This document shows positions 3,739-53,297 of a stretch of DNA of 64,000 nucleotides, piece by piece (the first letter of the stretch is position 1; each line of letters opens with the position of its first letter). The stretch spans positions 1,426,001-1,490,000 of the forward strand of contig CAJFCJ010000001.1 of NCBI GenBank assembly GCA_904063045.1, given 5' to 3'. Made by a program: the position numbers and the translations under genes. The notes beneath the pieces are model-generated. The model saw nothing but the letters and a program-made list of their open reading frames with translations, ran no database searches and was not told the DNA's origin. The DNA comes from Dimorphilus gyrociliatus. Its lineage: Eukaryota; Animalia; Annelida.

Positions 3739-6700
3739 TTAATCATCTAATTGACACAGCATGGCGCATCCTCGCTTTATCCAGTGTTGTACAGGTTTTT
3801 CGGTCGGTAATAATATTGATACAACATAGTTTGTTGAATGTCCAGTTGTCGATAAGGTTCCTTTTCTTTCGCTAGTTTTATAAACTGGACATGTGTATCT
3901 GGACGAACCTTCGTCAATATCTGATCTCTTCGCCGGCTTGAGCCAAATGATTGGTATGGCATCATATAAAACTTTTGGATTTTGCTCATTTAAGACGCCT
4001 TTTTTCTTATCCCATCGTGCTCCATCTAAGAATAAACCGTGAATATAGGCTCCGTCGGATGGACTATCGTCACTTTGTTCTTTAGGTAGAACCTCAAAAT
4101 CGAATCCCAGGAGATCAATCGGTATTTTGTATTTTCTAGCATAGTTTTGCATTACACCAGTCAAGAAAGCTTGGGTAAAGTAGAATCCCGAAACCCAAAA
4201 TACATGGGGTTTACCGTTATCGTACCATTTTTGTAAGAAGCTTAAACGTTCCAGGTAATCGTTTACATAAGAACCTAAAGGTTTTAATGATGGATAAGAT
4301 CTCTTAGCCCAAATAGCAGGTATTTTACCAATGAGTAACGATTGGGCAAGTGCTTCGAGATCTGAGTTCATAACAACCAAACCTTTTATTGCTTTTTGAA
4401 GGTTTTGTAAACTAGTTCTAATTATAACCATTAGTTTATTAAATCTTTCCATTTCCTGTACTAATACTGTATTCATGGATTCTTCATAGGTTACTGGAAA
4501 TTTCTGCTGAGCTTCCTCTAAATCAAAATCCTTCGGTAATTTCGACAAAATATCCGAAGCTATCTGATGTAGAGCCTCGTCAGATTTTCCCGCCCCTCCT
4601 GTGCTACCTCCTCCGAGCGTTAATAGCACATTATCGAATAGTTGTTTAGTTTCGGATAAATCCTTTGAAATATCGACGTTATCGTGCATGCCGAAAACCT
4701 CAGGAGTTTGAGTTTGGGGTAGATTCTGAATAAATTCCAAATACTCTTCGTAAGTTCCTTTTGGTGGAACATAGTATAAGCCAGAGGCGGAAAGTTTGTG
4801 CTTGGCTTCTTCTACAACTTTGTCATTGTAGAAATCAGCTAGAATAGTCATAAGAGTTCTTCTATCTCGATCATCTGTTACTCTTCCACCGTAGTTGCAT
4901 TCTCCAGTTAAGTATGTGATAGCATCGTACGGTACATCATCATATTCGTTTATGAACATTTGCAGTTGTCTTACAGATATTCGTAAGTCTGACTCGTTGA
5001 AACCGTATGGGATATTCCAACCCAAAGGACCGAATTTACGACGCTCTTGAACCAGAGCATGGAAAAAGCATAATGCGTATAGTAATTTCTCAAATGTTCC
5101 CTCCTTTCCTTTGCAATTTTGGAAGAATTCCTCGTCTGAAATTGGATCATTCAAGTAGGACTGTAAAAGATTCTGACGAAGTCCAGTTGGAGGTTCATTT
5201 GTCATTTTGACACCGTTCTGAAGGACTGTTACAGGAAACTTGTCACTTGGATAGCTTGTGAGCCATAATCTGTTAAGGAAATGATTAATTTACACATACA
5301 AGCTGTAAGAGGAAACAAGAGTTGGAAACAAACCTAAAATCTGGATGGGTATTTTCTGGTGTAAAATCCTCACAGATTTTCTCCATAGCTGTCATCCATG
5401 AGACTGCCAAATGACAGTTTTGCAGGAGAACCCAAGTTCCTTCTTGTTTCGCTGTTTGAATCATTTTTGCAGCAATGGGACCTTGACCCTGACCTAAAGA
5501 AATACTGTTAAATTTGTTGCCGCCAAAACCTTTATCCTCGGCGAATTTTAAGAGAGCCATTGTTGGATCAGCACCAGGTGAAAGAACAAAGATGAGAGGA
5601 GCGCAACAATTTGAGTCGGCGTAAGATTTTGTTAAATCAAACGGAGGAGGTTCAATAAACATTTGACCCAATTTATCCTTAACAAAATTAGCTACAGCAG
5701 GTATAACTTTATCAGGTCTAACGCAGCGAAGGACTATAAGCTTTTGGAATGGAGTCAATTTTTGCCAAGGTGGAGGCAATTCAGCTTTATGAGGAGCTTT
5801 GTCATCGTAGTACATCCTCCAAAGAGCTACATCTTTCACAAATTGTTGTCTACATAAATAGAAAGAAGCACTTAGAATAGACATTATATAAAAGTTGTAG
5901 TTCCTTACTTGAATCCTTTGAATGATGGTAGATCACTCATTCTACAAATTTCATCCCATGATTTATCTATTAACCAAGAAGGATCGGGATTAGGATCTTT
6001 GTTTTCCAATCCTATTCCTCCAGTTAGGAAGAACATAAACTCTGCCATATCTAATTCTTTCCTTGCCCTTTATTATTAGAATAATATCGTTATTATTTAC
6101 GTAAAGAGCAATACATTGTAGTAAAAAAATCGTCAATAAAAGCTAAGAAAGCGATGTGCAAGCAAGCAAACAAACAAACAACAGTCAAACTGTTATAATA
6201 AAAATAGTAAACCATGATTAAGTGTTTTTTTTTTAACTAAGAAAGAAATATCATGCCAAACAATAGGGAGAGAATATGCAAACTAATTAAAAAAATATGG
6301 TGCATTTTGGTGATTGTGGGATATTTAAAAATACAAAACAAACTGCAAACTGGCCAAAAAAAAGGTGCTAATTGCGTTTCTTTTTGTTGTGTTCAAACTA
6401 TCACACAAACTCACAGTATAACTTGAGAACAAAGAACCAGTGAAAACAATAGTTTGTCTCGTTCGAACAAGGATCGACAAACATTAGAATAAAGGTTGTA
6501 AGTAAAATGTTCTGATAGATGACGAAGTCGTTTAGCAACATTTTTAGATGGATTGCTGAAAAAATAGTGAAATATTGAAATCTTGTCCCGTTTTTCCCGT
6601 CTCTAGGAGCCTGTTTAACCTTGACCTATAAGCTTAACTTTAACTACTTCTCTATATATACTTTATCAACGGAAATCTTACAGTAGGAATTTAATACACA

Positions 6701-9700
6701 TTTGAAAGGATAGGGTTAATTTTGTCTTTTCGAATAATGAACGACAAACATTCGCGTAGAAATTATAAGTAAAATGATTTTTCAGATATCTTAATCGTTT
6801 GTCAATAATTTTCGACTTGTTGCTGAAAAAAGAAATATACATTTGCTGAAAGTTGACTACTAATAACGAACTAGGCCAACCCGCAATCAAAATAAAATAA
6901 TAAATAAACATTGATAATGAAACTACAAATATACGTCAATCATCGTTGTAACAATAATAATACTGTAATTAGTACAATTATACTAATAGTTAGTTAATGA
7001 ATCATCAAGAGCGATAGAATCGGAAGAAATTAGAATATATTGTTTTCTTCATTAAGATCATGGACAACGGTCCAACTTACAAAGTTAATTTGGAGCAGAG
7101 TATGAAGGATAAAGTAAGTTTATGTGCTGCAAACAATGATCGACAGACATTTTCGTACAAATTGTACTGAAAATGATCCTTCAAATATCCTAATCTGCGC
7201 TTTAAAATCCAAGATTTGTTGCTGGAAAATATCTTATCGTCTTAGAGAATGTTCATTAATTAAAGATAATCGTAGAGTATTTTATATATATGTATATATT
7301 AATGTTAAAGTTATCCTACAACTTAATTGATCTTTATATACTGAACAATTAAAATATTAAGGTTATACACTTACCTGTCGTGAATTGAATTCAAGAAGAG
7401 ATTTATAAACCAGGTTAAAGAATACTGGTACATAGGATCAATGTTTGGTAAATCGGCTATGGAAAAGAAAAGGATAGCGGAATGATTAGCTATAGGTCTA
7501 TATCCTTGTCTGGATTCATCAATCTTTTTCTCAGTTTCTTCTGCTATTTTTTGTTTCTTTGCAATTTCATCGGAGAGTATTTTAGACGAATCTAAAATTT
7601 GAATTGCACTTTCGTCTTCTAAAATGTTTCCCTCAGAAGCTGAGAGAGTATGAAGAATTTTATCTTCAATTTCTTTTAACTGACGACGGTTTGTTGCCGA
7701 TGTGACAATAAGAGCTTGACGCTCTTCCTCCAATTCAGGTCTGTTTTTTTAAAGATAACAATTAAATCATATATCTCTATAGTAGTAAAGTTTTTACAAA
7801 CCTTTCTTTGGCAACAACAATCCCTAGTAACTGATCTTCAAGACCCTCTGGCGTAATCATAAAATTCAATAACGATACTTTAGTGGCAACTTCCGGCAAG
7901 TAGTGCGGGTTCCTTAATTTCGTTGTTATATAAAATCGGAAATCTTTACTATATTCTATAACATTTTCGCCCAATCTAATCATTTCAACTCCACCTTAAT
8001 AAAAACGTATTAGATTATTAAATAGCTTTTTTTTTTAAAAAGAAAAAGCTTCAAGCTTGTTTTCACGTACCTTGTTTGAAAGTTTGTTTGAGTAGTAACG
8101 GTTCCAAGCTAGGATCGAGTTCTTCTCCAACATTTTCAAGTAGTAATGGATTTCCGAAAGTGACGCAATTTTCCAACGTTCTCATATAATCCGAATCAGT
8201 AAGCTGAAAGATATTGTTGAAATATCATCTCATAAAAGGAACAAAATCTCTCTTTTACCTTTATAACGGATAATTTATTTTCCTTTTCCATATTCTTTGT
8301 CCACTTATTGGCTTGGCCCTGAGGATCAATCATTAAGGGCCAACGTCTAGAGTTTGCAACAATTACGCCGTTATCGATAGAGAAAGCATCCCTTGGAAGA
8401 CCGGAGATATTCCAAGCTTGAATTTTAATAGGTTCTCCAAGAGTTTTTGTCAACGAGAAATGCTCTGAACAGGGTATTTTCTTTTCTTTGCATAGCTTTG
8501 TCCATTCTTGAGTACACTCTTCCCTAAATTATATAATCAGTTATTAATATTAATTGATAAGCTATTTTGAATTGTTTATCTACCTAAATGCTGAGGTAAA
8601 AGGCCCAAGGTAAGCTATAACTCCGGCAGAGACAAGCACATCACCCAATAGATTATCATATACTACTTGAAGGTTGGCGGCAGCTTGGGTCCATCTTTCT
8701 TTTTCACCACCTAAGCCTCCAATGAGTTTCTTGGCACGTTCTAGTTTCTTTCCGCATAAATCAACTTGGGCTTCCAAATCATCTTTTTCTTGTTCTTTTT
8801 GTTTCAATTGAGTAGCTAGATTAGCTAATTTCTCTTCGCCTGCTCTAAGTTCTGCTCTCTTTTCATTTAATTTAGACATTGTGGCGTCAAGGGTACTTTC
8901 GGCTTCTGCTAATTTGATTTTCTTAGGAGCAACAACTTTAGCAACACGGTCGTAAAGTTCCATAGCTGTTATCCATTTACAAAGACCTTCAGCCGCTGAG
9001 GAAGCTTTGGCCACTTTACTGGGATCGAATTCAGGATTAACAATGAATTCTTTTCTAATTTTACCCATAATGTGAGCAGGGATATTATCTTTATCATACT
9101 CTTTAAGACTGTCCAAAAATTTCATATCACCTAATAACTTCTTTGAAGGACCCCAGAAGTCCAATATTTTTTTACCAGTTCCGGCAGGATCCTGGATTTT
9201 TTCTGGACTAACATCTTTCATAACGCAAATAGCGTGCATAACCAATTTTACACCTGATGGTGGATTCTTCATAGTTTTTACAATAGAGATGTCACTAGGT
9301 TTTAATGTGTTTAGAGCGTCCAGAGCGGATTCTAGAGCGGGGATAGCCTCAGCTAAATCGGCTTCACATTCGTCTTTCAGAGCCTTGGCATTTGCAGCTT
9401 GCTCATTAGCGGCTGCTTCATCAGCTCTAACTCTTGTAGTTGTTGCGTCTACTTCAATCTTTTCTTCTTCAATTGTTTTGGTAATTTTAATGTTCTCTTC
9501 CTTGGATAACACTAGCTGAGGTTGTAAAGCTTCAAGTTCCTTTTGCATACTTGACACTTGAGATGCTGCGAAGGCTAATTTCTCTAAGCCAGTTTCGTAT
9601 CTTCTCTTTGCTTTCATTGTCTCTTCTTGTTTTGCAGACAATAAATTCTTGAAAGACCCTATTAATTCCAAATAGGATGTAGGAGTTACATAGTTATGAC

Positions 9701-12700
9701 GGCCCAAAGTTGATAAGAACTTTTCAGATAGAAGTCTAGCTGACGTGTGAAAGTACTGGCAAATATAAACACACTCTTCCTTCTCCTTGTCTTCAACTTC
9801 AGCGTGTTCCAGATATTTATTTGCAACTCTTTCCAAAGCATCTTGCGGCCATGCTTGGAACCAGTCTATTGTACAACAGTTAATTAGGGACGGATATTGT
9901 CGTAAACGATTGCGGAAAGCGTCTCCAATAGGACTGAATGCAATAATTATGTGTAAATTTGATTTACACCTATTCACAAAGAAACCCATTAGAGCTAGAG
10001 GCGTAAAATCAGCATTTTTATCCGGCGACTGAGCTTGAGCTGCAACTCTAACGCTCTGATTGGAGAAAATTAAGTAATAAATAATCATATAATTAATACT
10101 ATTAGCGAAAATGTAATCAATTTTAAGTGAATCTTACCTCCATTAATTCAGCTTTTTCGTCCGGAGCAAAAAGATTTGGAACTTCTCCAGTATTTAGTAA
10201 ACTGTCTATGTCTTCGAGGAAACTCTCTTCCTTAATCTGAGAGTCAGTGATAAGGAAAACTGTAGGTTTGCCTTGTCCACCAGTTATTTTTAATAGATTC
10301 TAAAAGATATGAATAGTTTGTTAATACATCACATGTATAATGCGTTTACAAGTGGGATGATTACCTTTAAGTCTTCGCGCCATTCGTTTTTACCATAGTT
10401 TTTCGAAATTTCCGGTTGGAATAGGTTCATTTGAGACATCGAGGCGGCCAATCTCGTTAAACTTTGTCTACCACTGCCTCCTACACCGACCAGAAGAGCA
10501 TTACCACCAGGCATCCTGAGAACTCTGCTAACTCTGCTCAAATGTTCTAATACGTATCGGAAAATAACAAGATTCATCCTTGTTTTATGAGTATTATTAT
10601 ATTCATCGAGGCATTGTTCGGCAACATTATAAAATTGATCAATAGATACTATTTCCTCATAAACTCTCTCTTCCGGTTCTAAATCCGGATTAATATAATC
10701 ACCAAACATAAGTGATCTTAAATCTTCTTCCATTAATTTTCCACCGTTTCCCTCGTTAGCGAGATGCTCAAAAACGACATCAAAAGAATCTTTAAAATGG
10801 TCCCTGATTAAATTTTTCATCATCCTAAGTGGGGAGAAGATGGGAAATTTTTAATTATAATACTGTATATAATGTACATTTTTGCATTGATCTTACTCAA
10901 ATAGCCAACTTCTATCCTTATCGTCGATAAGACGGTCGTAAAACACTCTCATTACTTCATGAACAAATAATCTTGTGAAAACTCTCTTATTTTCAACTTG
11001 TTCCTTTTTCATTAAGCAACAACCGAGGATAACTCGACTATAAAGGAATTACAGTATATTCATTGTTTCTTGAAGAGTTTTAAATGTTAATTAGCAAAGT
11101 TTTACCTGAAATCTCTAAGGTTAAATACGTAGTGACTTTTTGCCGGTGTTGGCAATAAATTAGACATAGCTGCCTTGTATACCTCCATTGTAGCGTGTAC
11201 AATAGCATTTCCGGCAGAAAAGAAGTCTGGAGCAAAATCTTGACTCTATTAAAGGGGCAAAGTGATCATATATTGATAAGACACTCAGTAGCTTTTACAA
11301 ACCCTTAGGTATGTTGTCATTAGTGTTGAAAAGATTCTGATCATAGTGTCGTCGTTGAATGGATTAATTGAAACTATGTTGAAGTGGCGTAAGAATCTTG
11401 GAGTTACATCATTTCTTCCACCTCCTGGAGGTCCCATAGCGGCAAGGAATTGAATATCTTGCAGTACTATTTTGGAAGTATCCTTCAAATCGTACCAGTT
11501 TTTATGATCAAAGTATTGACGTAAAAGTTCTATTGGAGGTTGTGCACCATAAATTTCCTTTGCAGGCATATTCATATCGTCGATAAAGATGATAGCTTTC
11601 TTTCCAACGGATGGTCCAAAAAAGCCTTTCCTTCTCTTATCTAGACGAATCATAATGATAAATTGAGTTTGATTAGCGCTAGTTTGAGCGGAAAAGTTCA
11701 CAAAAGTAGGAACGTATTTCTCTTTAGGTAGATCGTTTGTCAATTTTTGTTGAACATAGACTGATTTTCCAGTACCAGTAGGGCCAACAAATAGAATTGG
11801 TCTTTCATGTTTAATAGCCAAATCCATTAAATAAGAATATCTAACAGTATCCATAGTTGGAACTAATATTTCTTGTAATTTCTTCGTTAACGATACATTT
11901 GACGATTTTATAAAATCATTCCAATGTTTCCAAGAGCCTCTGGCCTTTTGCTATAAAATAATTCATTATATTGTTTATATAATAAGATTATGAAGAATTG
12001 TACCTCGTATGCAAAATCATAAACCAGGCCATTCTCGGGAAACATTACTTCAATCTTACCAATTGATTTTGGAATTGGGAAATTTTCATTCTTATTCATT
12101 AAGAGTTCTCTGAAGAATTTATCAAACTTTTCTCTACCATCAACGTCGGTTAAGGCTCCTAAACTCCATGGAACTGAGAATAGTATAGATGATAATAGCC
12201 ACGTTCTTAAATGTCTATTTTCGGCTACGTCTTCAGCATGGGCCGCATTGTGCATCAACATTTCTATCCAGTACATTAATGATCTTACTAAGTTACTAAC
12301 CGACGCCGGGACGTATTCTTTACAATTCTTTCGCAAAAAGTTTAGACAGGGATCAACGAGCCATTCGAATATCTCTTCTAATAATTCTGCATTATCCTTC
12401 GTTATCGATGGGTGTAGAGAGCGTATCCAAGATTTTAAAATAGGTCTCCAGCCTAAGGTAGCCGGCTCAAGATAAATCATACCACATCTCGATACGGTTG
12501 CAGGCTATTTATAACAATATACATATAGAAATATATATATATAAGATAGTGAAATTAAGATACCCTACCGAAGCTTGTGATAAATCCATAGTCTCAAATA
12601 TTAAACTCATAACAGACGACATTTGAATAACTTCTCCGCTCATTAAACACAATTTCTTGTTATCATCTAATACGGTATTCATATTTTCAATCCAAACAGC

Positions 12701-15700
12701 ATCAATTGGACCATCGAATATAACCCACTTCCTATCCGGAGTATCAGTTGATGCAAACTCTCTAAAAGTATTGGCGGTAATACCATCCGACCACTATTAA
12801 TATCCGTGAATAGTATAGATGAAAAAGAGAAGAGAACATGTATAAGTATAGTTTTATATAAATAATAATGGAAGATTAGTAATATATAAGAAAGATAAAA
12901 ATTAAAGAAGACAAATAATTCGAAAGAAACAATAAGTATGCATTAAATATTATACAGTTGAAGCATTATTGAATATGTTTGTATCATGCATCATTCCATG
13001 TGGATATTGTTGGTTTAATTGTTATTCTTTTATATAATATGCTTATATTGTATATTCATATAAACCGTATGTAAACAGTAATGCATATACAGTATAAAAC
13101 CATGCTGTATTAACAAATATTGCTTTGATTATTACCTCTCTCCAACTCTATTATTTTTTAATGATTTTTTTTAGTGAAATTGTGATGTCACACGGTTTTT
13201 TTTATAATTAAAAGAGTTTAATATTAATAATTAGATTGATTTAAATTGAAATAATTTGAATAGATTAAATTATGAATATTTATATGATAATACTTTATTA
13301 CGTACCTCGTGTGAAACTGCGTCAAATTGTCCGTACAGTTGTCCCATTGTAATAGCTTTTGGATTTATTGTTCTGTACATCACCTTTTCATATTCTTCGT
13401 TGCCTTCTTCGTGTAATAGTGTCATGGCTTCTGCCATTGTATGAATTACTGAGGTCTTTGAACCAAATGGCTCGCCAACCAACATGAAACCGTGTCTTAC
13501 AATCATCATTTCGTACATTTGAATAATTTTTTCATTGAAAAAGTCTACTGCTTGTAGATTTCTTTTGTCGCATATTTTCTGAACGGCTGTTAGGAAAGTT
13601 GAATAATCGGCTTTTGGTAGGTCAGTACCGGGGAAAAGATCAGATATTATTCCCTCGAACAAAGGTATATCGTGAGCCAAGAATTTTGGAAGGTTAACAT
13701 CCATTATAGATCTTAAGAGAAGGATATTTTCATTCTCATCCGGATATTTTAATTTCAAGTTTCCTGCAGCGGAAAGTACGGCCTTAACGGCTCTCATACC
13801 ATAATCGTAGTGAAATTGGGATGATAACTGTTCAGAGCACAGCCTATAGGTTGTTACAATTTTTACCGCTAAACTTCTGGCATCCATAAAGCCGAAACTG
13901 TACAAACTGATTTCTCCAATCATAGCATAGTCGGGTACCATCATAGCGACAGTTCTAAAGAGAACTTTGAGATTATCGGGTAATTCTGATCGGCCAGCGT
14001 AGCCAGGATTCATTGTAATGCAGACGTAACAATTTGGATTCAAGTTTAATTCAGTTCCTTCAAAACTGAACGTGTCTACGTGCGATTGAACAGCTCTGAT
14101 AATACACAGAATCTGCTGAGCGACAACAGACAATACTTCTAATTCAATTCTATTAAATTCATCAAAGCAAGCCCAAGCTCCCGACGAGGCTAAACCTTTG
14201 AAAAATTTACCCATAGCAATGTAATCTAAACCATCCGAACAGTTAAATACGACACATTGAACAGCTAATGCCTTGGCTAAATCTTTGGTCGTTTCTGTCT
14301 TTCCAGTTCCAGCTGGACCTTCAGGGGCTCCATTCAAATTCAAATGGAAGGCTCCCATCAAAGTACGATAGCATCTATCAGTTAACGGTGTAATAACAAG
14401 ACGGCCACTATTACCCAAATATTCGTTAGCATATTTAACGGTAGCGTTTATAATTCTGACTTTACAAACTTCCTCCTCCCAATAGTATCTAATGACAAAT
14501 ATAGATTAATACTCAATGATATCAACTATGTAAAATAATGATAGAAAAAGGGCAATTTACAAACCTTAATTGAGCTAACCATTGGAAATCATTCTCCGAC
14601 GAGACGCCCTTTTCGGCCAAATCTAATACAACATCTCTTGCGTGAACATCAATTACAACAAGAGCTCCTAGAGTAATTCTTTGTTGTTTTGTTAATTTGC
14701 CTCTAACTAATTCAACTATCTTTCCCAATTGTTCTTGTAATCTTTGATAAAATTCCTTTAGTCCTTTTGCTCCTCCTTTAATTGCGTCGTGAACCTCCAA
14801 TGTCCAATAAATTTGGGATACGCATAGTACAACTTGGCCAGGCCATTCCTTAACCCATTCTTCTCTAGCTTCAATAGCATAGGCCTATTTATAGGAGAGG
14901 AAATTTACTAAAATAAATCAAAGATATACACATATGTACATAATAAACAAAAAAAATGGTAATAGGAATTATATATTAACAGTTTTTAGCTTGTTCATTT
15001 TTTTTGCTCATTTTGAATAACGATATAAAAATTTGCATATTTTTACATAATTTATAAAAGTATGCAAATATATGCAAATTTCTTTTTTGGGCGTGAAATA
15101 CTGTATACTGTGTTAAATGCTACAGGAGAGCCATGCATTGTTTTATTTTTGTTTTGGTAATTTTTTTTGTTATTGCTATTATAAAAAATGGATTGGGATT
15201 TTAGGTAGTTTTTATCAAACCTTTCTTAATTTACGACGACGTTTTCGTAAATCCTTAAGTTGTCTCAAACATTCAGTATAGAGTTCTTTTAACATTAGTT
15301 TAAATCTTTTTTTATACTTACATCTCTAGAGGCCGCAATTACATCTCGAACGCTCATTAGCATAACATCTTGAACTTGAAGGAGCCATTTTTCAACTGCA
15401 CCTCTAGCTTCAGATGTTGAAATAACTTGACTAAGTTTTACCTGTGTTTATTTATAGATTTAATAAAGTTGACAAAATGAAGCTACTGCGTTATTTACCT
15501 TCTCTCCTTCGCTACTAAACATAGCTAGAATATCTAAATGTTTGTCGAATTCTAGTTTTCCGATACCTTCGAAACATTTCTTTAAATGAGGTTGAACTCT
15601 TGTAGGATCTTTTGTTTCGGAGAGGATTTCCAACATTTCATCGTTGGATAAGAAAAAGAATCTGGGGAAAAATAATCTCTTCTTTTCCAAATAGGCATTT

Positions 15701-18700
15701 AAACCCTTGTTTATCTTATCTAGTAGACCGTTCGAATCTTGTAGTTTTTCTAACAGGCCTGCCTGACCGGCGGCGACAAGAACATGAGCGTCTTTTCCCG
15801 TATGCTTCATAACTTCTTTCCAATTTCTATCGACGGTTGTGAATAGACGCCCTTCTTCTGGCATTTGTTGCATAATATCTTCTGATGAGAAAATTGGCTC
15901 CAAATAAAGCCATTGAGCTTGGACCTATAATGAAAATATCCGTAAGAATAGTCATTTTTTAAATGAAAAATATAGGGTCTACCTTCAGCCATTCGTCTAT
16001 TGTGTCTTGAATCCTAATTAACTTCTCCTCCCAAGCCTTAATTTCCCTATCAAACGGTTTAATGAAAGGAGATCCTCGCATGGTTTGAGTTTTAACAATT
16101 TGATCGTCAAGTAGAGTTTGTATTTCATCTACGGATGCTAAAATGTTAACACCCGTATCGCGATAAACCGTTAAGCCAAAGACGATATCATTCCATTCGT
16201 CTTGCATTTTGTACATTGTCTTCTCCAATGAATGTTCTTTGGTGGCTGCGCCGGAAATCTGTTCAAATTGCTCCATGAATGGTGCAATGTCTAATTTTAA
16301 CATTTTCCTTAGAGATGTTCCAGCATCTGGTTGAATTTCGAATTTCGCAAGTTCTTCCATTTGTTTCCAATGACGCTCTCGTAATCCTTTATTACACATG
16401 ATGGAAATAACTGGAATGTGTTCTTTAAATTCTCTCATTTTTTCTTGAACTTTATTACAAGCTAACAAGGCGGCTGGTGGTTGAATTTCGGCTTCTTCAG
16501 CTACTTCTTCTTGATCTTCTTCGCTCTGTTGACGCCTTTTCTTTTTCCTTTCTCTATCTCTTTCTTCCTTTTCTGCTTGTAATTTCTTTACTTTTTGATT
16601 GAATACTTTTTGAACTTTGTATAAATCTTTCCAATAATCATCTAGTTCATTTGCGATTTGTTCATCGTCTAAAGCGCCAAAATTTCCATCCATCCATTTT
16701 CTTTCAGCCTTTTGCCAGGAGACTACAACGGCAAACAGCCTTTTAAAAGGTTCAATACCGCTTGTAATTTCATCGACTTGTGGATATTGATTAACTGGAA
16801 ATTTATACAGTTTCTCCTCTGTATTTGTCCATTCAATTTCATTTTGAGCTTCGGTAAGCTTCTTTTGAGTTTGTCTTATCTCTTGCATGTATGTTTGCAT
16901 CATATCCAATTCACCACAATCGTCTAATTCCTCTACTCTCTGTTTCAATTTGTTTAGCTCGAATATTAATTTCTCCCTTCTTTCTACTAATTGTTTCTCT
17001 CCTTCCTGTTTCATCTTTTCAACCAATTCATCATTTTGATCAAATATTGGATTAATTCTTTTTGGCCAGAGCATAGTAGTCTTGTTCAATTCTATATCCT
17101 CTTCTGAAAATATGTAAACATCCAACATCCATTGTAGATGCTCAAAGCTAGTTTTAATTCTTTCGTTTAATTTGATCATGCCTAGCGTTCTGGCATTCTC
17201 AATAAAAGATATCATATCCATCAATTCATCACTTTTTTCCGTTTCGGAGAGTGCTCTCTCTTTGATATGATCGAATTCGGCACAAATTTCTGAATTTTCA
17301 TTTCTGTGATCTGTAGCCATTCTTTCGAGAAGACGATTAGCATGATTTCTGGCCACTTCGGCTAATCCTCTTTTCAAATCCTCGCAGTCCAATTCGATCA
17401 TATCGTAGTGTTCAATCATTGGTAAAACAGATATCTGTCTTGCAACATCTCTAAAGGAATCGATATATTCGCAATATTCCTCAAAATCGTGATCCTCTTC
17501 CAAGAATTTTGTAATTTGCGATTCGGCTTCTCCGTTTATCAACCAATTATATTTACTCACTTGATGGATATAATTAACAATATGAATATTCATATGATTA
17601 AAACTATTAAAATTTACTTACCAAACCATTCAAGATGGGCTTGAGCTTCTTCAAAATTTCGTTTTACAGCTTCTTTCAACTTATTTTTAGCCCAATCCAA
17701 AATGTGATCGGCGACAGTGGCGTTTACAATTTGTGGATTACTTCCGGAAAGGAAACTTTGAACAGTACTAATATTTTGTAGAGTTTTTGATATCTGTTCA
17801 GGTACGAAGAGAATTAACTCTTCTAGACTATCATAGGTTGGATAAAATTGCATTTGATTATCGTCGTAGATGAGTTCCATTCGGAGTAAAGGTAATTTTT
17901 CTTTATTTGTCTCATCAAATAGATTCACCCACTGTCTTATTGATCTCTCTAATAAACCTTTCAATTGATTGGACATAAGACACGTGACGCAATTATAGAA
18001 ACTGTCCAATTTATTAGAAGACACTGAAGTGAAATTATTCTTATCAGCGAATAAATGAACAACAGCAGGATGCCAAGTGGAATTTAATTTTTCTTCTACT
18101 TTTTCCGCTTCCAGTAAGACGGAATTTCTCAATACGTCAAAGTCAGTTGGACCTTCTCTTCTGAATTGAGAACCATCAACAACCAACAATGGACCAAGAA
18201 TGCTTTCACATTTGTGCAATACTTTCTGCATTGACGGATGAAGTATATGCAAATTCGATGCGATCTGATTTTTATGCTCCACGAATGCTTTGTGCCATTT
18301 AGAAGAGAAATCAAGACCGATAGCTTCCTCATCAATCGGCTGATTATCGTCTTCTTCCAATCCTCTTACAGGTGGTCTAACAAGGTTCATTTGCACTGTA
18401 GAAAGTGAGCATGGTTTATAAAAAAAATACTAGGTTAACGTAAGTGAATAAGTAAAAAATACCATTAGATCGCCTCATACTACGTTCATAATCTTCCTTA
18501 ACCTCATCGAACACTTGTCGAATATATTGTTGAGCTCCTCCCTGAAATTAAATTTCCATGTTAATTTGACAAAACATCTTTCAATTACATTAAAATAATA
18601 ATTAAATATAAATCATACGCAATATCATAAAGGCAAATTAATTTTAATAATCAATTAAGCTTAATTTAAATATACAAATTCATATTTAATTCGATTTAAG

Positions 18701-48995: not shown

Positions 48996-51900
48996 CCCTA
49001 CGACTCATGAAGGTACGTTAATTTTCTATAATATCTAAGCATTACAGCCAAATATCTTCTTCTGCTACATGTCAACATAAGGATTAAATTTCAATAATAA
49101 TGCATGATGCTCTAATATTTTATGAAAAGAACAATTATACCTCTTAAAATAGTTGCCGAAGTACTACGGCAGAATCGATAAATCGTAGTAAAAACGTTTC
49201 AAAATTAAGTCCAATTGTGTAAGAACGTGTTGTTTCGAAATCCGCCACAGTGAAATGTACTGTTCTTATATCGTTAAAATAGTAGCAAGTCGCTTGACAT
49301 GTCTATATCAACAAAAACATTAACTATTTCAGATATTGAGAATCAGGTTCGGGAGTTACAGGAAAAAAGAAGGGCTGTGAATGTAACTCGTGATGATGAA
49401 GGGAATGCCAGAATTGCAATGGGAGAAAGCGGATATTACGATAAAGATATCTACGGTGGCAGTTCAAAAGCAAATTATGGAGGTTACGTAGATTCAATTG
49501 CTGCTAATGATGATATTGATGATGACGAGGATGAACATTTTGCACCTCAACTTGGTAAAAAAGTTCAATATACAGCCCCACTCAATCAGCTAAGTGATTT
49601 ATCAAGAGAGGAAAGAGATCATGATCCTCTAGCCGGTCGACGAATTCCTAAAGTAATCGACAAAGAAGATGACTATAGAAAAAGGAGACTTAATCAGCAA
49701 CTCTCTCCTTCTCGATATGATCCTTTTGCAGGGGATAAGACACCAGATGTTCGCTCCGAACGTAGAAGTTACGCAGATATTCTAAGAGATAATCAGTTGA
49801 AAGCTCGTGAATATGATCTCAAGCAGCAAATGATTGAAAAGGCCAAGGAAGGAACTTTAAAGGCAACAAATGGAGATATTGTATCTAAACCAAAAAAGAG
49901 AATAGGACGATGGGATCAGCCAAGTGATGCTGATGGTACTCCTGCTGCCAAGAAAACCAGTTGGGATGAAGCAGCTACTCCCCATGTTGCTAGATGGGAT
50001 GAAACACCAGCCAGACTGAAATCTGGAGCAGAAACACCATCTCAAAAAATGTGGGATAGTACACCTGGACCAATGACTCCGGGTGGAGAGACACCTGGTC
50101 ACACAACTACACCAAGCGCTAGAAGAAATCGTTGGGATGAGACACCTAGAGCAGGAGCAGAAACTCCGGCCCAAAGCGGTTGGGCAGAAACTCCTAGAGC
50201 AGATCGAGGATCCGATAGTATACAAGACACTCCATCAGCTCAACAAGCAAAAAGAAGATCGAGATGGGATGAAACTCCAGCGATGACACCTCAAACAGGA
50301 GCAGTAACGCCAGGAATGACTCCAAGCATGACCCCAGGAGCCATGACACCATCTGGTCTCGGCGCTGGTCAACATACTCCTGGCACGTTTACACCAACTG
50401 GCGCGCCGGGTGTCTACACACCTATGGGTTTGACACCATCAGGTCAAACTCCTTCTGGATCTAAAGCGATGGGAATGGCTACTCCAACGCCAGGCCACCT
50501 TGTATCTATGACACCTGAACAGATGCAAGCATTTAATTGGCAAAGAGAAATTGATGAGAGAAATGGTCCATTAACTGATGAGGAATTAGATGCCAAGTTT
50601 CCACCAGGATACAAAATTTTGGCTCCTCCAGCAGGATATATACCAATAAGAACACCCGGTCGCAAACTTACAGCAACTCCAACACCCTTCTTAGGAGGAA
50701 CTCCATCAGGATTCAAAATGCAAACACCGGATCAAAAAACAACGATGGTTGATCTGCAACCCAAGGGACAAAATCTACCTATGATGAAGCCTGATGACAT
50801 GCAATATTTTGATAAACTATTGGTAGATGTTGATGAAGACAACCTTCCCCCAGAAGAAGCAAAAGAAAGAAAGATTATGAAACTCCTACTTAAAGTTAAA
50901 AATGGCACGCCACCAATGAGAAAATCAGCTTTGCGACAGTTAACTGACAAAGCCAGAGAATTTGGAGCTGGACCTCTGTTTAATCAAATACTTCCCTTGC
51001 TAATGTCACCAACGTTAGAAGATCAAGAGCGTCATTTACTGGTTAAGGTTATTGACAGAGTTCTCTACAAATTGGATGATTTAGTTAGGCCGTACGTTCA
51101 TAAAATTCTTGTGGTTATTGAACCCCTATTAATCGACGAAGATTACTATGCACGTGTGGAAGGTCGTGAAATTATATCAAATTTGGCTAAAGCTGCCGGA
51201 TTGGCAACAATGATCTCTACAATGAGACCTGACATAGATAATATGGATGAGTACGTAAGAAATACTACAGCCAGAGCTTTTGCAGTAGTAGCTTCTGCTT
51301 TGGGAATTCCTGCTCTCTTGCCTTTCCTCAAAGCTGTTTGCAGAAGTAAGAAAAGTTGGCAAGCAAGACATACAGGCATAAAAATCATTCAACAAATAGC
51401 CATTCTGATGGGATGCGCTGTCTTACCTCACTTGCGATCACTGGTTGATATTATCGAACACGGTTTAGTTGATGAACAGCAAAAAGTGCGAACAATCACA
51501 GCTTTGGCTTTGGCTGCCCTTGCAGAAGCTGCTACTCCATATGGTATAGAGAGTTTTGACGCTGTATTAAAACCTTTGTGGAAAGGAATAAGACAGCATC
51601 GAGGTAAAGGTCTGGCTGCTTTTTTAAAAGCTATTGGTTACCTTATTCCATTGATGGACGCCGAATATGCCAATTATTACACCAGAGAAGTAATGTTGAT
51701 TTTGATTAGAGAATTTCAGTCTCCTGACGAAGAAATGAAAAAGATCGTTTTAAAAGTTGTAAAGCAATGTTGTGCAACTGATGGTGTTGAGGCACAATAT
51801 ATTAAGGAAGAAATTCTACCGCCCTTCTTCAAACATTTTTGGAATCAAAGAATGGCTCTCGACAGGAGAAATTACCGACAGTTAGTTGACACCACTGTTG

Positions 51901-53297
51901 AAATTGGTATGAAAGTGGGAGCATCAGAGCTGGTTTCACGAATTGTTGACGATCTGAAGGATGAAAGCGAACAATATAGGCGTATGGTAATGGAAACCAT
52001 CGATAAAACTCTTTCTACCCTTGGAGCTTCAGATATAGATTCAAGACTGGAAGAACAGTTAATTGACGGTATTTTATATGCTTTTCAAGAACAAACCAGT
52101 GCTGGAGATGCTGATAACGCAGTTATGTTAAATGGTTTTGGAACTGTTGTGGTTGCGCTTGGAAGGCGAGTTAAACCATACTTGCCTCAAATATGTGGTA
52201 CAATTTTATGGCGTCTCAACAACAAAGCTGCCAAGGTCAGACAACAAGCTGCAGATTTAATTGGTCGAATCGCGGTTGTTATGAAAACATGTGAAGAAGA
52301 AAAATTAATGGGTCATTTAGGTGTTGTTCTTTACGAATATTTAGGTGAGGAATATCCTGAAGTACTTGGTTCCATAATTGCAGCTCTTAAAGCTATTGTA
52401 AATGTAATTGGTATGTCACGTATGACACCTCCTATAAAGGATTTATTACCTCGATTGACACCAATCTTGAAAAATCGCCACGAAAAGGTCCAAGAGAATT
52501 GTATTGATTTAGTTGGAAGAATTGCAGATAGAGGAGCAGAATTTGTTTCTGCAAGGGAATGGATGAGAATATGCTTCGAATTGCTTGAATTACTAAAAGC
52601 TCACAAAAAAGCAATAAGAAGAGCAACTGTCAATACTTTCGGTTATATAGCAAAAGCCATTGGTCCTCATGATGTTTTAGGGACTCTTTTGAATAATTTA
52701 AAAGTTCAAGAGAGACAAAACCGTGTATGCACAACAGTAGCCATTGCAATTGTTGCGGAGACATGTTCACCTTTCACTGTTTTACCAGCATTAATGAATG
52801 AATACAGAGTACGAGAACTTAACGTTCAAAACGGAGTCTTGAAAGCTTTGTCATTCATGTTCGAATACGTTGGAGAAATGGGAAAAGACTATATCTATGC
52901 TGTGGCTCCTTTATTTGAGGATGCATTGATGGATAGAGATCTTGTCCACAGGCAAACAGCTATGTTTGCTGTTCAACATTTAGCTCTTGGAGTGGCTGGA
53001 TTGGGATGTGAAGATGCACTACAACATTTAATAAATTATGTTTGGCCAAATATACTGGAAAGTTCACCTCACGTTGTTCAAGCATTTATGGGCTGCGTGG
53101 ATGGCTTTCGATTATCTCTTGGTCCCGCAAGAGTTCTCAACTATACTCTTTCTGGACTCTTCCATCCAGCAAGAAAAGTAAGGCATGTATATTGGAAAGT
53201 TTACAATAGCGTTTATATAGGAGCTCAAGACGCATTAGTTGCAGCCTACCCAAGAATTCCGGGCTTTTCAAGACATGAACTGGACTATATGCTGTAG
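48988..53297 (+). CDS. SF3B1: Splicing factor 3B subunit 1 (two exons: 48988-49012 and 49333-53297)
   Basis: MAAPTTHE|DIENQVRE; RWDETP (ULM) and TP repeats; highly conserved HEAT repeats; E622/R625/H662/K666/K700/R1074-equivalent residues are wild type. The ORF track ATG at 49299 is intronic. Confidence 0.97.

What the first reader, a model, noticed from the sequence alone, without database searches (positions are those of the whole stretch)
6415..7221. Three-way tandem exon cassette (candidate mutually exclusive splicing) in the DNAH12 motor domain
Between the exons ending ...NSIHD(S) and starting [10 protein letters not shown], the same exon occurs three times (7221-7081, 6822-6682, 6555-6415). 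Each copy is exactly 141 nt, phase 2/2, with a canonical AG/GT and no stop. By hand count the peptides are only about 54-65% identical but keep SN.S.....RL..L..HF.YN.Y.NVCRSLF...KL..S...C, a pattern expected from purifying selection on old duplicates. The conserved FEKDKL motif varies as FAAHKL / FEKTKL / FERDKL. The exon encodes helices of the AAA5 small subdomain just after the buttress, which couples the ATPase ring to the stalk. Including more than one copy would duplicate a folded element, so exclusive use is inferred: one gene could make three tuned inner-arm motors, for example for sperm versus different ciliary bands. I know of no such cassette in DNAH12, but cannot check the literature.
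Basis: partly seen in the sequence, partly recalled or inferred. Interest (0 to 1): 0.9.

Follow-up and report, generated by a model that had tools for sequence, protein, structure and literature searches.

The report
Swappable exon cassette in DNAH12 dynein
An inner-arm ciliary dynein gene (DNAH12 type) has three alternative copies of one 141-base exon; RNA shows two of them used one at a time, and the first copy is shared with molluscs and a brachiopod, so the gene makes at least two versions of its motor.

Summary
Three homologous 141-nt exons lie in tandem on the minus strand: A 7221-7081, B 6822-6682 and C 6555-6415. All have AG/GT sites, phase 2/2 and no stops. They sit between constitutive exons of a clear DNAH12 orthologue.

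One spliced transcriptome of the same organism holds the joints up->A, A->down, up->C and C->down at similar depth. It holds no A-B, B-C or A-C joint. A and C are therefore mutually exclusive in RNA.

Exon B was never seen spliced productively. It is intact, keeps 22 of 25 family-conserved residues, and lies on an RNA contig that ends exactly at its donor site. The three-way use is unproven.

Exon A belongs to a distinct "first-copy" type (T18Q, E31A, D33H). RefSeq isoforms and one full-length transcript of gastropods carry the A-type alone.

The cassette encodes two helices of the AAA5 small subdomain, after the buttress hairpin.

It is an old mutually exclusive exon cluster that already sits unremarked in database gene models. 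I found no paper on it. The scan has many other exclusive-exon notes in this genome.

The parts
7375..7740 (-). Upstream constitutive exon. It holds the end of AAA5 large, the buttress hairpin and helix H7, and ends ...NSIHD plus 2 nt.
   Evidence: Spliced RNA contig and joints; Pfam AAA_9 on residues 1-59; matches human DNAH12 residues 3054-3177.
7222..7374 (-). Intron 1 (153 nt), GT-AG.
   Evidence: Joint 7221->7375 at depth 218; zero RNA depth inside, by arithmetic on the depth bins.
7081..7221 (-). Cassette exon A, the 'first-copy' type (Q18, A31, H33).
   Evidence: Joints to both flanking constitutive exons; falls in the first-copy clade with mollusc and brachiopod first copies.
6823..7080 (-). 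Intron 2 (258 nt), retained in part of the A-containing RNA. It holds an element at 6936-6948 complementary to exon A.
   Evidence: Unspliced contig 6682-7109 at depth 31; stem found and tested.
6682..6822 (-). Cassette exon B: intact, canonical at positions 18 and 31, T at 33. Productive splicing not observed.
   Evidence: 22 of 25 conserved family positions kept; RNA only on the intron-2-retaining contig, which ends exactly at the B donor.
6556..6681 (-). Intron 3 (126 nt), GT-AG.
   Evidence: Zero RNA depth, by arithmetic on the depth bins.
6415..6555 (-). Cassette exon C, canonical type (T18, E31, D33).
   Evidence: Joints 6555->7375 (depth 257) and 6066/7->6414/5 (depth 206).
6068..6414 (-). 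Intron 4 (347 nt), retained at about 21x.
   Evidence: Unspliced contig 6038-6443.
5909..6067 (-). Downstream constitutive exon, (L)[10 protein letters not shown]...
   Evidence: Spliced contig and joints; reading frame checked.
7132..7144 (-). Exon A arm of a predicted 13-bp long-range stem with 6936-6948. The stem encloses the A donor site.
   Evidence: Present in both the MFE and the centroid fold; z = -3.0. Stem score p about 0.0125 against dinucleotide shuffles.
7074..7120 (-). Predicted local hairpin pairing the A donor GUAAGUU (7080-7074) with AACUUAC inside exon A (7120-7114).
   Evidence: prediction only.
3742..18429 (-). Body of the DNAH12-type heavy chain gene. The 5' end was not delimited.
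   Evidence: ORF map; PDB matches of the tail and C-terminal exons to DNAH12; Pfam.

Best explanation
This is an ancient cluster of mutually exclusive exons in the motor domain of the single-headed inner-arm dynein heavy chain DNAH12. The spliceosome joins the upstream exon to one cassette exon and that exon to the downstream exon. Each mRNA therefore carries one 47-codon version of the last two core helices (probably H8-H9) of the AAA5 small subdomain. That subdomain carries the buttress and moves as a block with AAA6L to shift the stalk. In this animal, A (first-copy type, with the near-invariant T18 and the acidic E31/D33 of FEKDK replaced) and C (canonical) are both used at roughly equal levels, giving two motor isoforms. 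B is a third, intact, protein-constrained copy whose productive inclusion has not been seen. It is probably used in a tissue or stage not sampled. Shown: the exon anatomy, A/C exclusivity in RNA, the deep conservation of the A type, and purifying selection. Inferred: the functional difference between isoforms, the use of B, and how double inclusion is prevented.
For: Anatomy and frame. RNA: the joints up->A (depth 218), A->down (147), up->C (257) and C->down (206) are present, and no joint links two cassette exons. DNAH12 orthology: the tail exon scores 560 bits to DNAH12 against 341 to DNAH7, and the C-terminal exon 860 against 760. Conservation: three tandem 141-nt copies occur in L001/L002, L006 and L003-5, and two in L007/8, L009, L012, L013 and L014. 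The first-copy type always comes first, and all have AG/GT. Tandem two-copy gene models exist in Sinanodonta, Plakobranchus, Biomphalaria, Pomacea, Nucella, Lingula and Taenia. A-type-only RefSeq isoforms exist in Gigantopelta, Haliotis and Physella, and a full-length Logan transcript also carries the A type alone. The first copies form a clade with window exon A: support 95/92, and 83/88 with named taxa. Selection: dN/dS is 0.086, 0.082 and 0 for the three exons between two related bivalve-like genomes. Within the window pS is saturated (0.77-0.86) while pN is 0.27-0.34. B keeps 22 of 25 strongly conserved family positions. Location: the cassette lies between Pfam AAA_9 and the AAA6 P-loop. 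The model shows a long helical hairpin, one helix, then the cassette as two helices. This matches the H5-H9 topology of AAA5S in PMC4047620.
Against: Only one transcriptome could be examined, and it consists of assembled contigs that drop rare forms. Rare double inclusion, or B inclusion, cannot be excluded or confirmed. No joint involving B was listed. No functional data exist for any isoform. The structure model is of low confidence across the first half of the cassette (pLDDT 38-50), so the H8-H9 assignment is an inference from helix order. No mechanism enforcing exclusivity was established.
Confidence: 0.85

Rival explanations
1. The cassette is two-way only. Exon B is an unused relic duplicate that the spliceosome normally skips.
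For: No up->B or B->down joint. B is covered only at 20-31x, against 218-257x for A and C, and only on an unspliced contig. A word-index search with exon B found no spliced fragment from this species. Middle copies do not form a clade across lineages.
Against: With synonymous sites saturated, B still has no stop; a stop-free run of 47 codons has a chance of about 0.025 at this base composition (my arithmetic). It keeps 22 of 25 family-conserved residues, more than A or C, and has the best pyrimidine tract and a consensus donor. The RNA contig ends exactly at B's donor, and intron 3 has zero depth, which suggests that the donor is used. The middle exon of the bivalve-like genomes has dN/dS 0.08.
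Confidence: 0.25
2. Exon B acts as a decoy or poison element. It is spliced at its donor only in RNAs that keep intron 2 (A-intron 2-B-...). These carry an immediate stop and serve to down-regulate, or to enforce exclusivity, rather than to encode protein.
For: Intron 2 is retained at about 31x while introns 1 and 3 have zero depth, and the contig stops at the B donor. Intron 2 retention gives a stop right after exon A (sequence). Structured RNA around the A donor involves intron 2.
Against: A decoy does not need 22 of 25 conserved protein positions or an open frame. The junction beyond B's donor was never seen. Intron 4 is retained at a similar level, so this may simply be slow splicing.
Confidence: 0.12
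3. Two or three copies are included together, since 141 nt keeps the frame, duplicating the helices. This is how several ab initio gene models of molluscs, Lingula and Taenia read.
For: Tandem inclusion is in frame. Database models with two copies exist.
Against: No A-B, B-C or A-C joint appears in RNA, while single-exon joints are abundant. RefSeq isoforms and a full-length transcript carry one copy only. All solved dynein structures have one copy.
Confidence: 0.03

Closest known systems
Mutually exclusive exon in the cytoplasmic dynein heavy chain of Schistosoma mansoni (SmDHC1), the test case of WebScipio (Pillmann et al. 2011, PMC3228551). Kollmar 2016 (PMC5100056) also remarks that some DHC genes have alternative splice forms in the motor domain.
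   Same: A dynein heavy chain motor-domain exon duplicated in tandem, with equal length, split codons at both ends and strong homology, judged exclusive because all other dyneins have one copy.
   Different: That case is in cytoplasmic dynein 1, has two copies in another part of the motor, and was predicted from the genome. This one is in an axonemal inner-arm dynein (DNAH12), has three copies in AAA5S, has RNA junction evidence for two, and has a first-copy type conserved across molluscs, a brachiopod and other genomes.
Classical homologous exclusive-exon clusters in motor and adhesion genes (arthropod muscle myosin heavy chain, Dscam, 14-3-3 zeta).
   Same: Tandem homologous exons of the same length and phase swap a folded element of a conserved domain. 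The duplicates are old and under purifying selection.
   Different: I could not show a docking-site/selector system. The introns are not too short, there is no U2/U12 mix, and the frame is kept on double inclusion. The enforcing mechanism is therefore open.
RefSeq/Gnomon isoform models of 'dynein axonemal heavy chain 12-like' in molluscs (for example Gigantopelta aegis X3, Haliotis cracherodii X1, Physella acuta X1, against the canonical Crassostrea gigas X3 and Mya arenaria X1).
   Same: The same gene, the same exon position (after ...SI(H/Q)DS), and the same A-type/canonical alternatives.
   Different: Those are automatic models, not described in any paper I could find. They show two alternatives. 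The window's animal (and the bivalve-like L001/L006 and L003) has a third copy.

Membership tests
Mutually exclusive exon cluster (criteria of Pillmann et al. 2011) | Neighbouring internal exons lie within what would otherwise be one intron. | tested here: met
   A, B and C lie between the constitutive exons ending at 7375 and starting at 6067.
Mutually exclusive exon cluster (criteria of Pillmann et al. 2011) | About the same length, with the same splice-site type and the same reading-frame phase. | tested here: met
   All are 141 nt, AG/GT and phase 2/2.
Mutually exclusive exon cluster (criteria of Pillmann et al. 2011) | Sequence homology: the exons encode the same structural element. | tested here: met
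   52-63% amino-acid identity with 21 invariant columns. All three align to the single segment 3179-3223 of human DNAH12.
Mutually exclusive exon cluster (criteria of Pillmann et al. 2011) | Mature transcripts contain exactly one of the exons. | tested here: inconclusive
   Met for A versus C: four single-exon joints and no joint between cassette exons. Not testable for B: no productive joint was seen in one contig-level transcriptome.
DNAH12 orthologue (single-headed inner-arm dynein, DNAH3/7/12 group) | The family-specific tail and the motor both match DNAH12 best. | tested here: met
   Tail exon: 560 bits to DNAH12 against 341 to DNAH7 and 281 to DNAH3. C-terminal exon: 860 against 760 and 750. 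Named orthologues are recovered.
Exclusivity by steric hindrance (alpha-tropomyosin type) | The intron between the alternative exons is too short to be spliced. | tested here: not met
   The introns are 258 and 126 nt, while this gene's ordinary introns are 55-76 nt. It may apply to the 68-70 nt B-C intron of L001/L006.
Exclusivity by spliceosome incompatibility (U2/U12) | One U12-type and one U2-type splice site flank the pair. | tested here: not met
   All donors are GTAAGT, GTAAGA or GTGAGT, with pyrimidine-tract AG acceptors.
Exclusivity by frame shift plus nonsense-mediated decay | Exon length is not a multiple of 3. | tested here: not met
   141 = 3 x 47, so double inclusion stays in frame.
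Exclusivity by competing RNA pairings (docking site and selectors, Dscam exon 6 / 14-3-3 zeta type) | One conserved intronic docking site is complementary to a selector next to each variant exon. | tested here: inconclusive
   Whole-intron duplexes are not above shuffles. One intron-2 element pairs with the homologous NVCRSLF-coding core of A (best; p about 0.0125), C and B, and is part of the MFE fold (z = -3.0). No close relative is available for covariation, and the position is not shared with other lineages.

The most novel reading that the evidence does not exclude
The A-type and canonical (and possibly B) isoforms are functionally distinct inner-arm motors. They would be placed in different cell types (sperm flagella versus epithelial or larval cilia) or at different docking sites of the 96-nm repeat. 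Spiralian animals would then diversify inner-arm dyneins by exon swapping in the AAA5 small subdomain, where vertebrates rely on paralogues (DNAH3/7/12). The conserved E31A/D33H change at the turn between the two helices would retune the coupling between the AAA5S/AAA6L block and the buttress.
Probability: 0.3. Interest if true: 0.7.

Novelty: new member of a known kind. Interest (0 to 1): 0.5.

Why it matters
Axonemal dynein diversity is usually explained by paralogous heavy-chain genes. Here one gene makes at least two motors that differ only in 46 residues of the AAA5 small subdomain, the piece that carries the buttress and passes ring movements to the stalk (PMC6600642, PMC4047620). The first-copy type has been kept since before molluscs, a brachiopod and this animal's lineage diverged. 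Selection has therefore maintained both versions, and they form a natural pair for asking what this subdomain tunes. Practically, ab initio gene models in several molluscs, Lingula and Taenia read both copies in tandem, and they should be corrected.

Tried and rejected
- A word-index protein search with exon B, to catch spliced fragments from transcriptome assemblies, gave only two unrelated fragments.
- The ESM Atlas look-up of exon A gave no useful hit.
- Whole-intron RNA duplex energies were no better than shuffles, z from -0.05 to +1.5. One all-against-all duplex script and an earlier one timed out.
Taxa came instead from named proteins.
- Literature searches for exclusive exons in DNAH12, axonemal dynein or the Drosophila Dhc genes found no relevant paper.
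- Rejected with evidence: assembly artefact, tandem inclusion, steric hindrance, U2/U12 incompatibility and a frame-shift/NMD filter (see the rival explanations and membership test).
- Read laying allows one call, so no second look at B junctions or at other runs was possible.
Full report
**Observation.** On the minus strand, the exon ending ...NSIHD at 7375 is followed by three 141-nt segments at 7221-7081 (A), 6822-6682 (B) and 6555-6415 (C), and then by the exon starting at 6067.
- Each segment has a pyrimidine tract plus AG in front and GTAAGT, GTAAGA or GTGAGT behind.
- Each starts with one base that completes a codon and ends with two bases (phase 2/2). None contains a stop.
- Peptide identities are 63% (A/B), 57% (B/C) and 52% (A/C). 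Nucleotide identities are 62, 61 and 55%.
- Any one of the three splices in frame through to the stop codon of the gene.
- A profile built from the three peptides finds exactly three copies in the 64-kb window.

**The gene.** The flanking exons and the cassette match human DNAH12 (PDB 8j07 chain g1) best. The cassette aligns to residues 3179-3223 of 3960.
- The tail-domain exon, which is family-specific, scores 560 bits to DNAH12 against 341 to DNAH7.
- The C-terminal exon scores 860 against 760.
- Pfam places the cassette between AAA_9 (the AAA5 large subdomain) and the AAA6 P-loop.

**RNA evidence.** Only two runs were offered. X2 carries spliced, mismatch-free contigs of this gene and is therefore a transcriptome of the same organism. 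X1, a coral metatranscriptome, covers other exons of the gene but not the cassette.

In X2 the joints are:

| Joint | Depth |
|---|---|
| 7375->7221 (up->A) | 218 |
| 7081->6067 (A->down) | 147 |
| 7375->6555 (up->C) | 257 |
| 6415->6067 (C->down) | 206 |

- All four are GT..AG. No joint links A to B, B to C or A to C.
- A and C are thus used alternatively, at about 46:54.
- Working back from the depth bins, introns 1 and 3 have zero depth. Intron 2 is covered at 31x and intron 4 at 21x.
- The intron-2 contig runs from inside exon A through exon B and ends exactly at B's last base (6682).
- A chance dead end at that base is unlikely. It suggests that B's donor is spliced in RNAs that still hold intron 2, and that the short low-depth junction path was lost in contig clean-up. 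This is an inference.
- No productive up->B or B->down joint was seen.

**Is B a live exon?**
- Synonymous differences among the three copies are saturated (pS 0.77-0.86), while pN is 0.27-0.34.
- B keeps 22 of the 25 positions that are at least 80% conserved among 149 family hits. A keeps 20 and C keeps 21.
- An unconstrained copy of this age should have lost its frame and these residues.
- I therefore think B encodes protein somewhere, but this is not shown.

**Relatives.** A profile search of 1.84 billion representatives returned mostly single-exon ORF fragments with the same exon borders. One subgroup resembled exon A. Fetching their contigs gave the following.
- Three tandem 141-nt copies occur in L001/L002, in L006 (a related species) and in L003-L005.
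- Two copies occur in L007/L008, L009, L012, L013 and L014. One copy occurs in L010 and L011.
- All have AG/GT sites, and the A-like copy always comes first.

Named full-length proteins then gave the taxa.
- Gene models that read an A-type and a canonical copy in tandem exist in the bivalve Sinanodonta, in the gastropods Plakobranchus, Biomphalaria, Pomacea and Nucella, and in the brachiopod Lingula. The tapeworm Taenia solium has a divergent first copy.
- RefSeq isoforms of Gigantopelta, Haliotis and Physella carry the A type alone between ...SI(H/Q)DS and LA(K/R).... So does a full-length transcript contig (P0275).
- Crassostrea, Mya, Octopus, Liolophura, Lottia and Owenia models carry the canonical exon alone. 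So do all listed cnidarian, hemichordate, echinoderm, tunicate, vertebrate, insect and placozoan models. That list is no proof of absence.

In trees of the 46 residues, the first copies form one clade that includes window exon A.
- Support is 95/92.
- With named taxa and the Taenia first copy, support is 83/88. A clade of the 18 A-type rows alone is not rejected (p-AU 0.38).
- Middle copies are not resolved as one group, so the third copy may have arisen more than once.
- Between L001 and L006, dN/dS is 0.086, 0.082 and 0 for the three exons.
- The signature of the first-copy type is T18 to Q/S, N20 to Q, C23 to D/E, E31 to A (18 of 18), D33 to H (16 of 18) and L36 to V.
- No solved dynein structure carries this signature.

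**Structure.** An AlphaFold model of the Gigantopelta A-type segment has mean pLDDT 69, and is low across the first half of the cassette.
- After the AAA5 alpha/beta part it shows two long helices (169-202 and 211-263), one helix (271-287), and then the cassette as a kinked helix (294-319) and a helix (321-338).
- In yeast dynein the AAA5 small subdomain is a five-helix bundle. H5 and H6 are elongated into the buttress, and extra helices follow H9 (PMC4047620).
- By order, the cassette is probably H8-H9, and the A31/H33 change sits at the turn between them.
- AAA5S moves with AAA6L and pulls the buttress against the stalk. The AAA5S/AAA5L interface is proposed to coordinate ATPase activity, microtubule binding and mechanics (PMC6600642).
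- A swap here could plausibly tune that coupling. This is inference.

**How exclusivity is enforced is open.**
- The introns between copies (258 and 126 nt) are longer than the gene's usual 55-76 nt. All sites are U2 type, and 141 nt keeps the frame. Steric hindrance, spliceosome incompatibility and NMD filtering therefore do not apply.
- One lead: a 13-bp stem between exon A (7144-7132) and intron 2 (6948-6936) encloses the A donor. That donor itself pairs with AACUUAC inside exon A.
- The 281-nt region folds with z = -3.0. The stem score is reached by 1.25% of dinucleotide shuffles.
- The same intron element pairs more weakly with the homologous part of B and C, but that follows from their homology.
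- No close relative is available to test covariation.

**Known or new.** Exclusive exons in a dynein heavy chain are known from Schistosoma DHC1, and are mentioned in general terms by Kollmar. I found no paper on such a cassette in DNAH12 or in any axonemal dynein. The two-way alternative is, however, already present in automatic RefSeq isoforms of molluscs. Earlier notes of this scan list about 190 exclusive-exon observations in this genome, including two in other dynein genes. Those are unchecked leads. I rate this a new, well-supported member of a known kind.

Noticed in passing
window 6682-7109 and 6038-6443: Introns 2 and 4 of the cassette are retained at about 31x and 21x in run X2, while introns 1 and 3 have zero depth. 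The intron-2 contig ends exactly at exon B's donor site.
   Followed up: partly
window 7074-7144 and 6936-6948: Predicted RNA structure masks the exon A donor: a local hairpin GUAAGUU/AACUUAC sits inside a 13-bp exon-intron stem. The region folds with z = -3.0.
   Followed up: partly
L001:6219-6330 and L001:8161-8205 (aligned with L006): In two related bivalve-like genomes, about 100 nt after the first-copy exon and about 42 nt after the last exon are 90-100% conserved, while the rest of the introns is not. These are possible splicing control elements. In L006 the first element can pair with the 3' end of the exon (-25 kcal/mol).
   Followed up: partly
L001:7950-8019, L006:7875-7942: The intron between the middle and last cassette exon is only 68-70 nt in these genomes. 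It may be short enough for steric exclusion there, unlike in the window.
   Followed up: no
proteins P0158, P0159, P0163, P0177, P0222, P0254, P0273: Public gene models of Sinanodonta, Plakobranchus, Biomphalaria, Lingula, Pomacea, Nucella and Taenia read two cassette exons in tandem. This is very likely an annotation error that duplicates two helices.
   Followed up: partly
window 4800-5152, 7802-8820: A coral metatranscriptome (run X1) holds spliced, near-identical contigs of this gene, so this animal or a very close relative was present in that coral sample.
   Followed up: no
same genome, other windows (notes s1-080489, s1-081244): First-stage notes report candidate exclusive exons in the microtubule-binding domain of cytoplasmic dynein 1 and in an outer-arm dynein of the same genome. 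Not checked here.
   Followed up: no
window 49278-53294 (+): A single uninterrupted open frame of 1339 codons lies in a window otherwise full of short-intron genes. Not examined.
   Followed up: no
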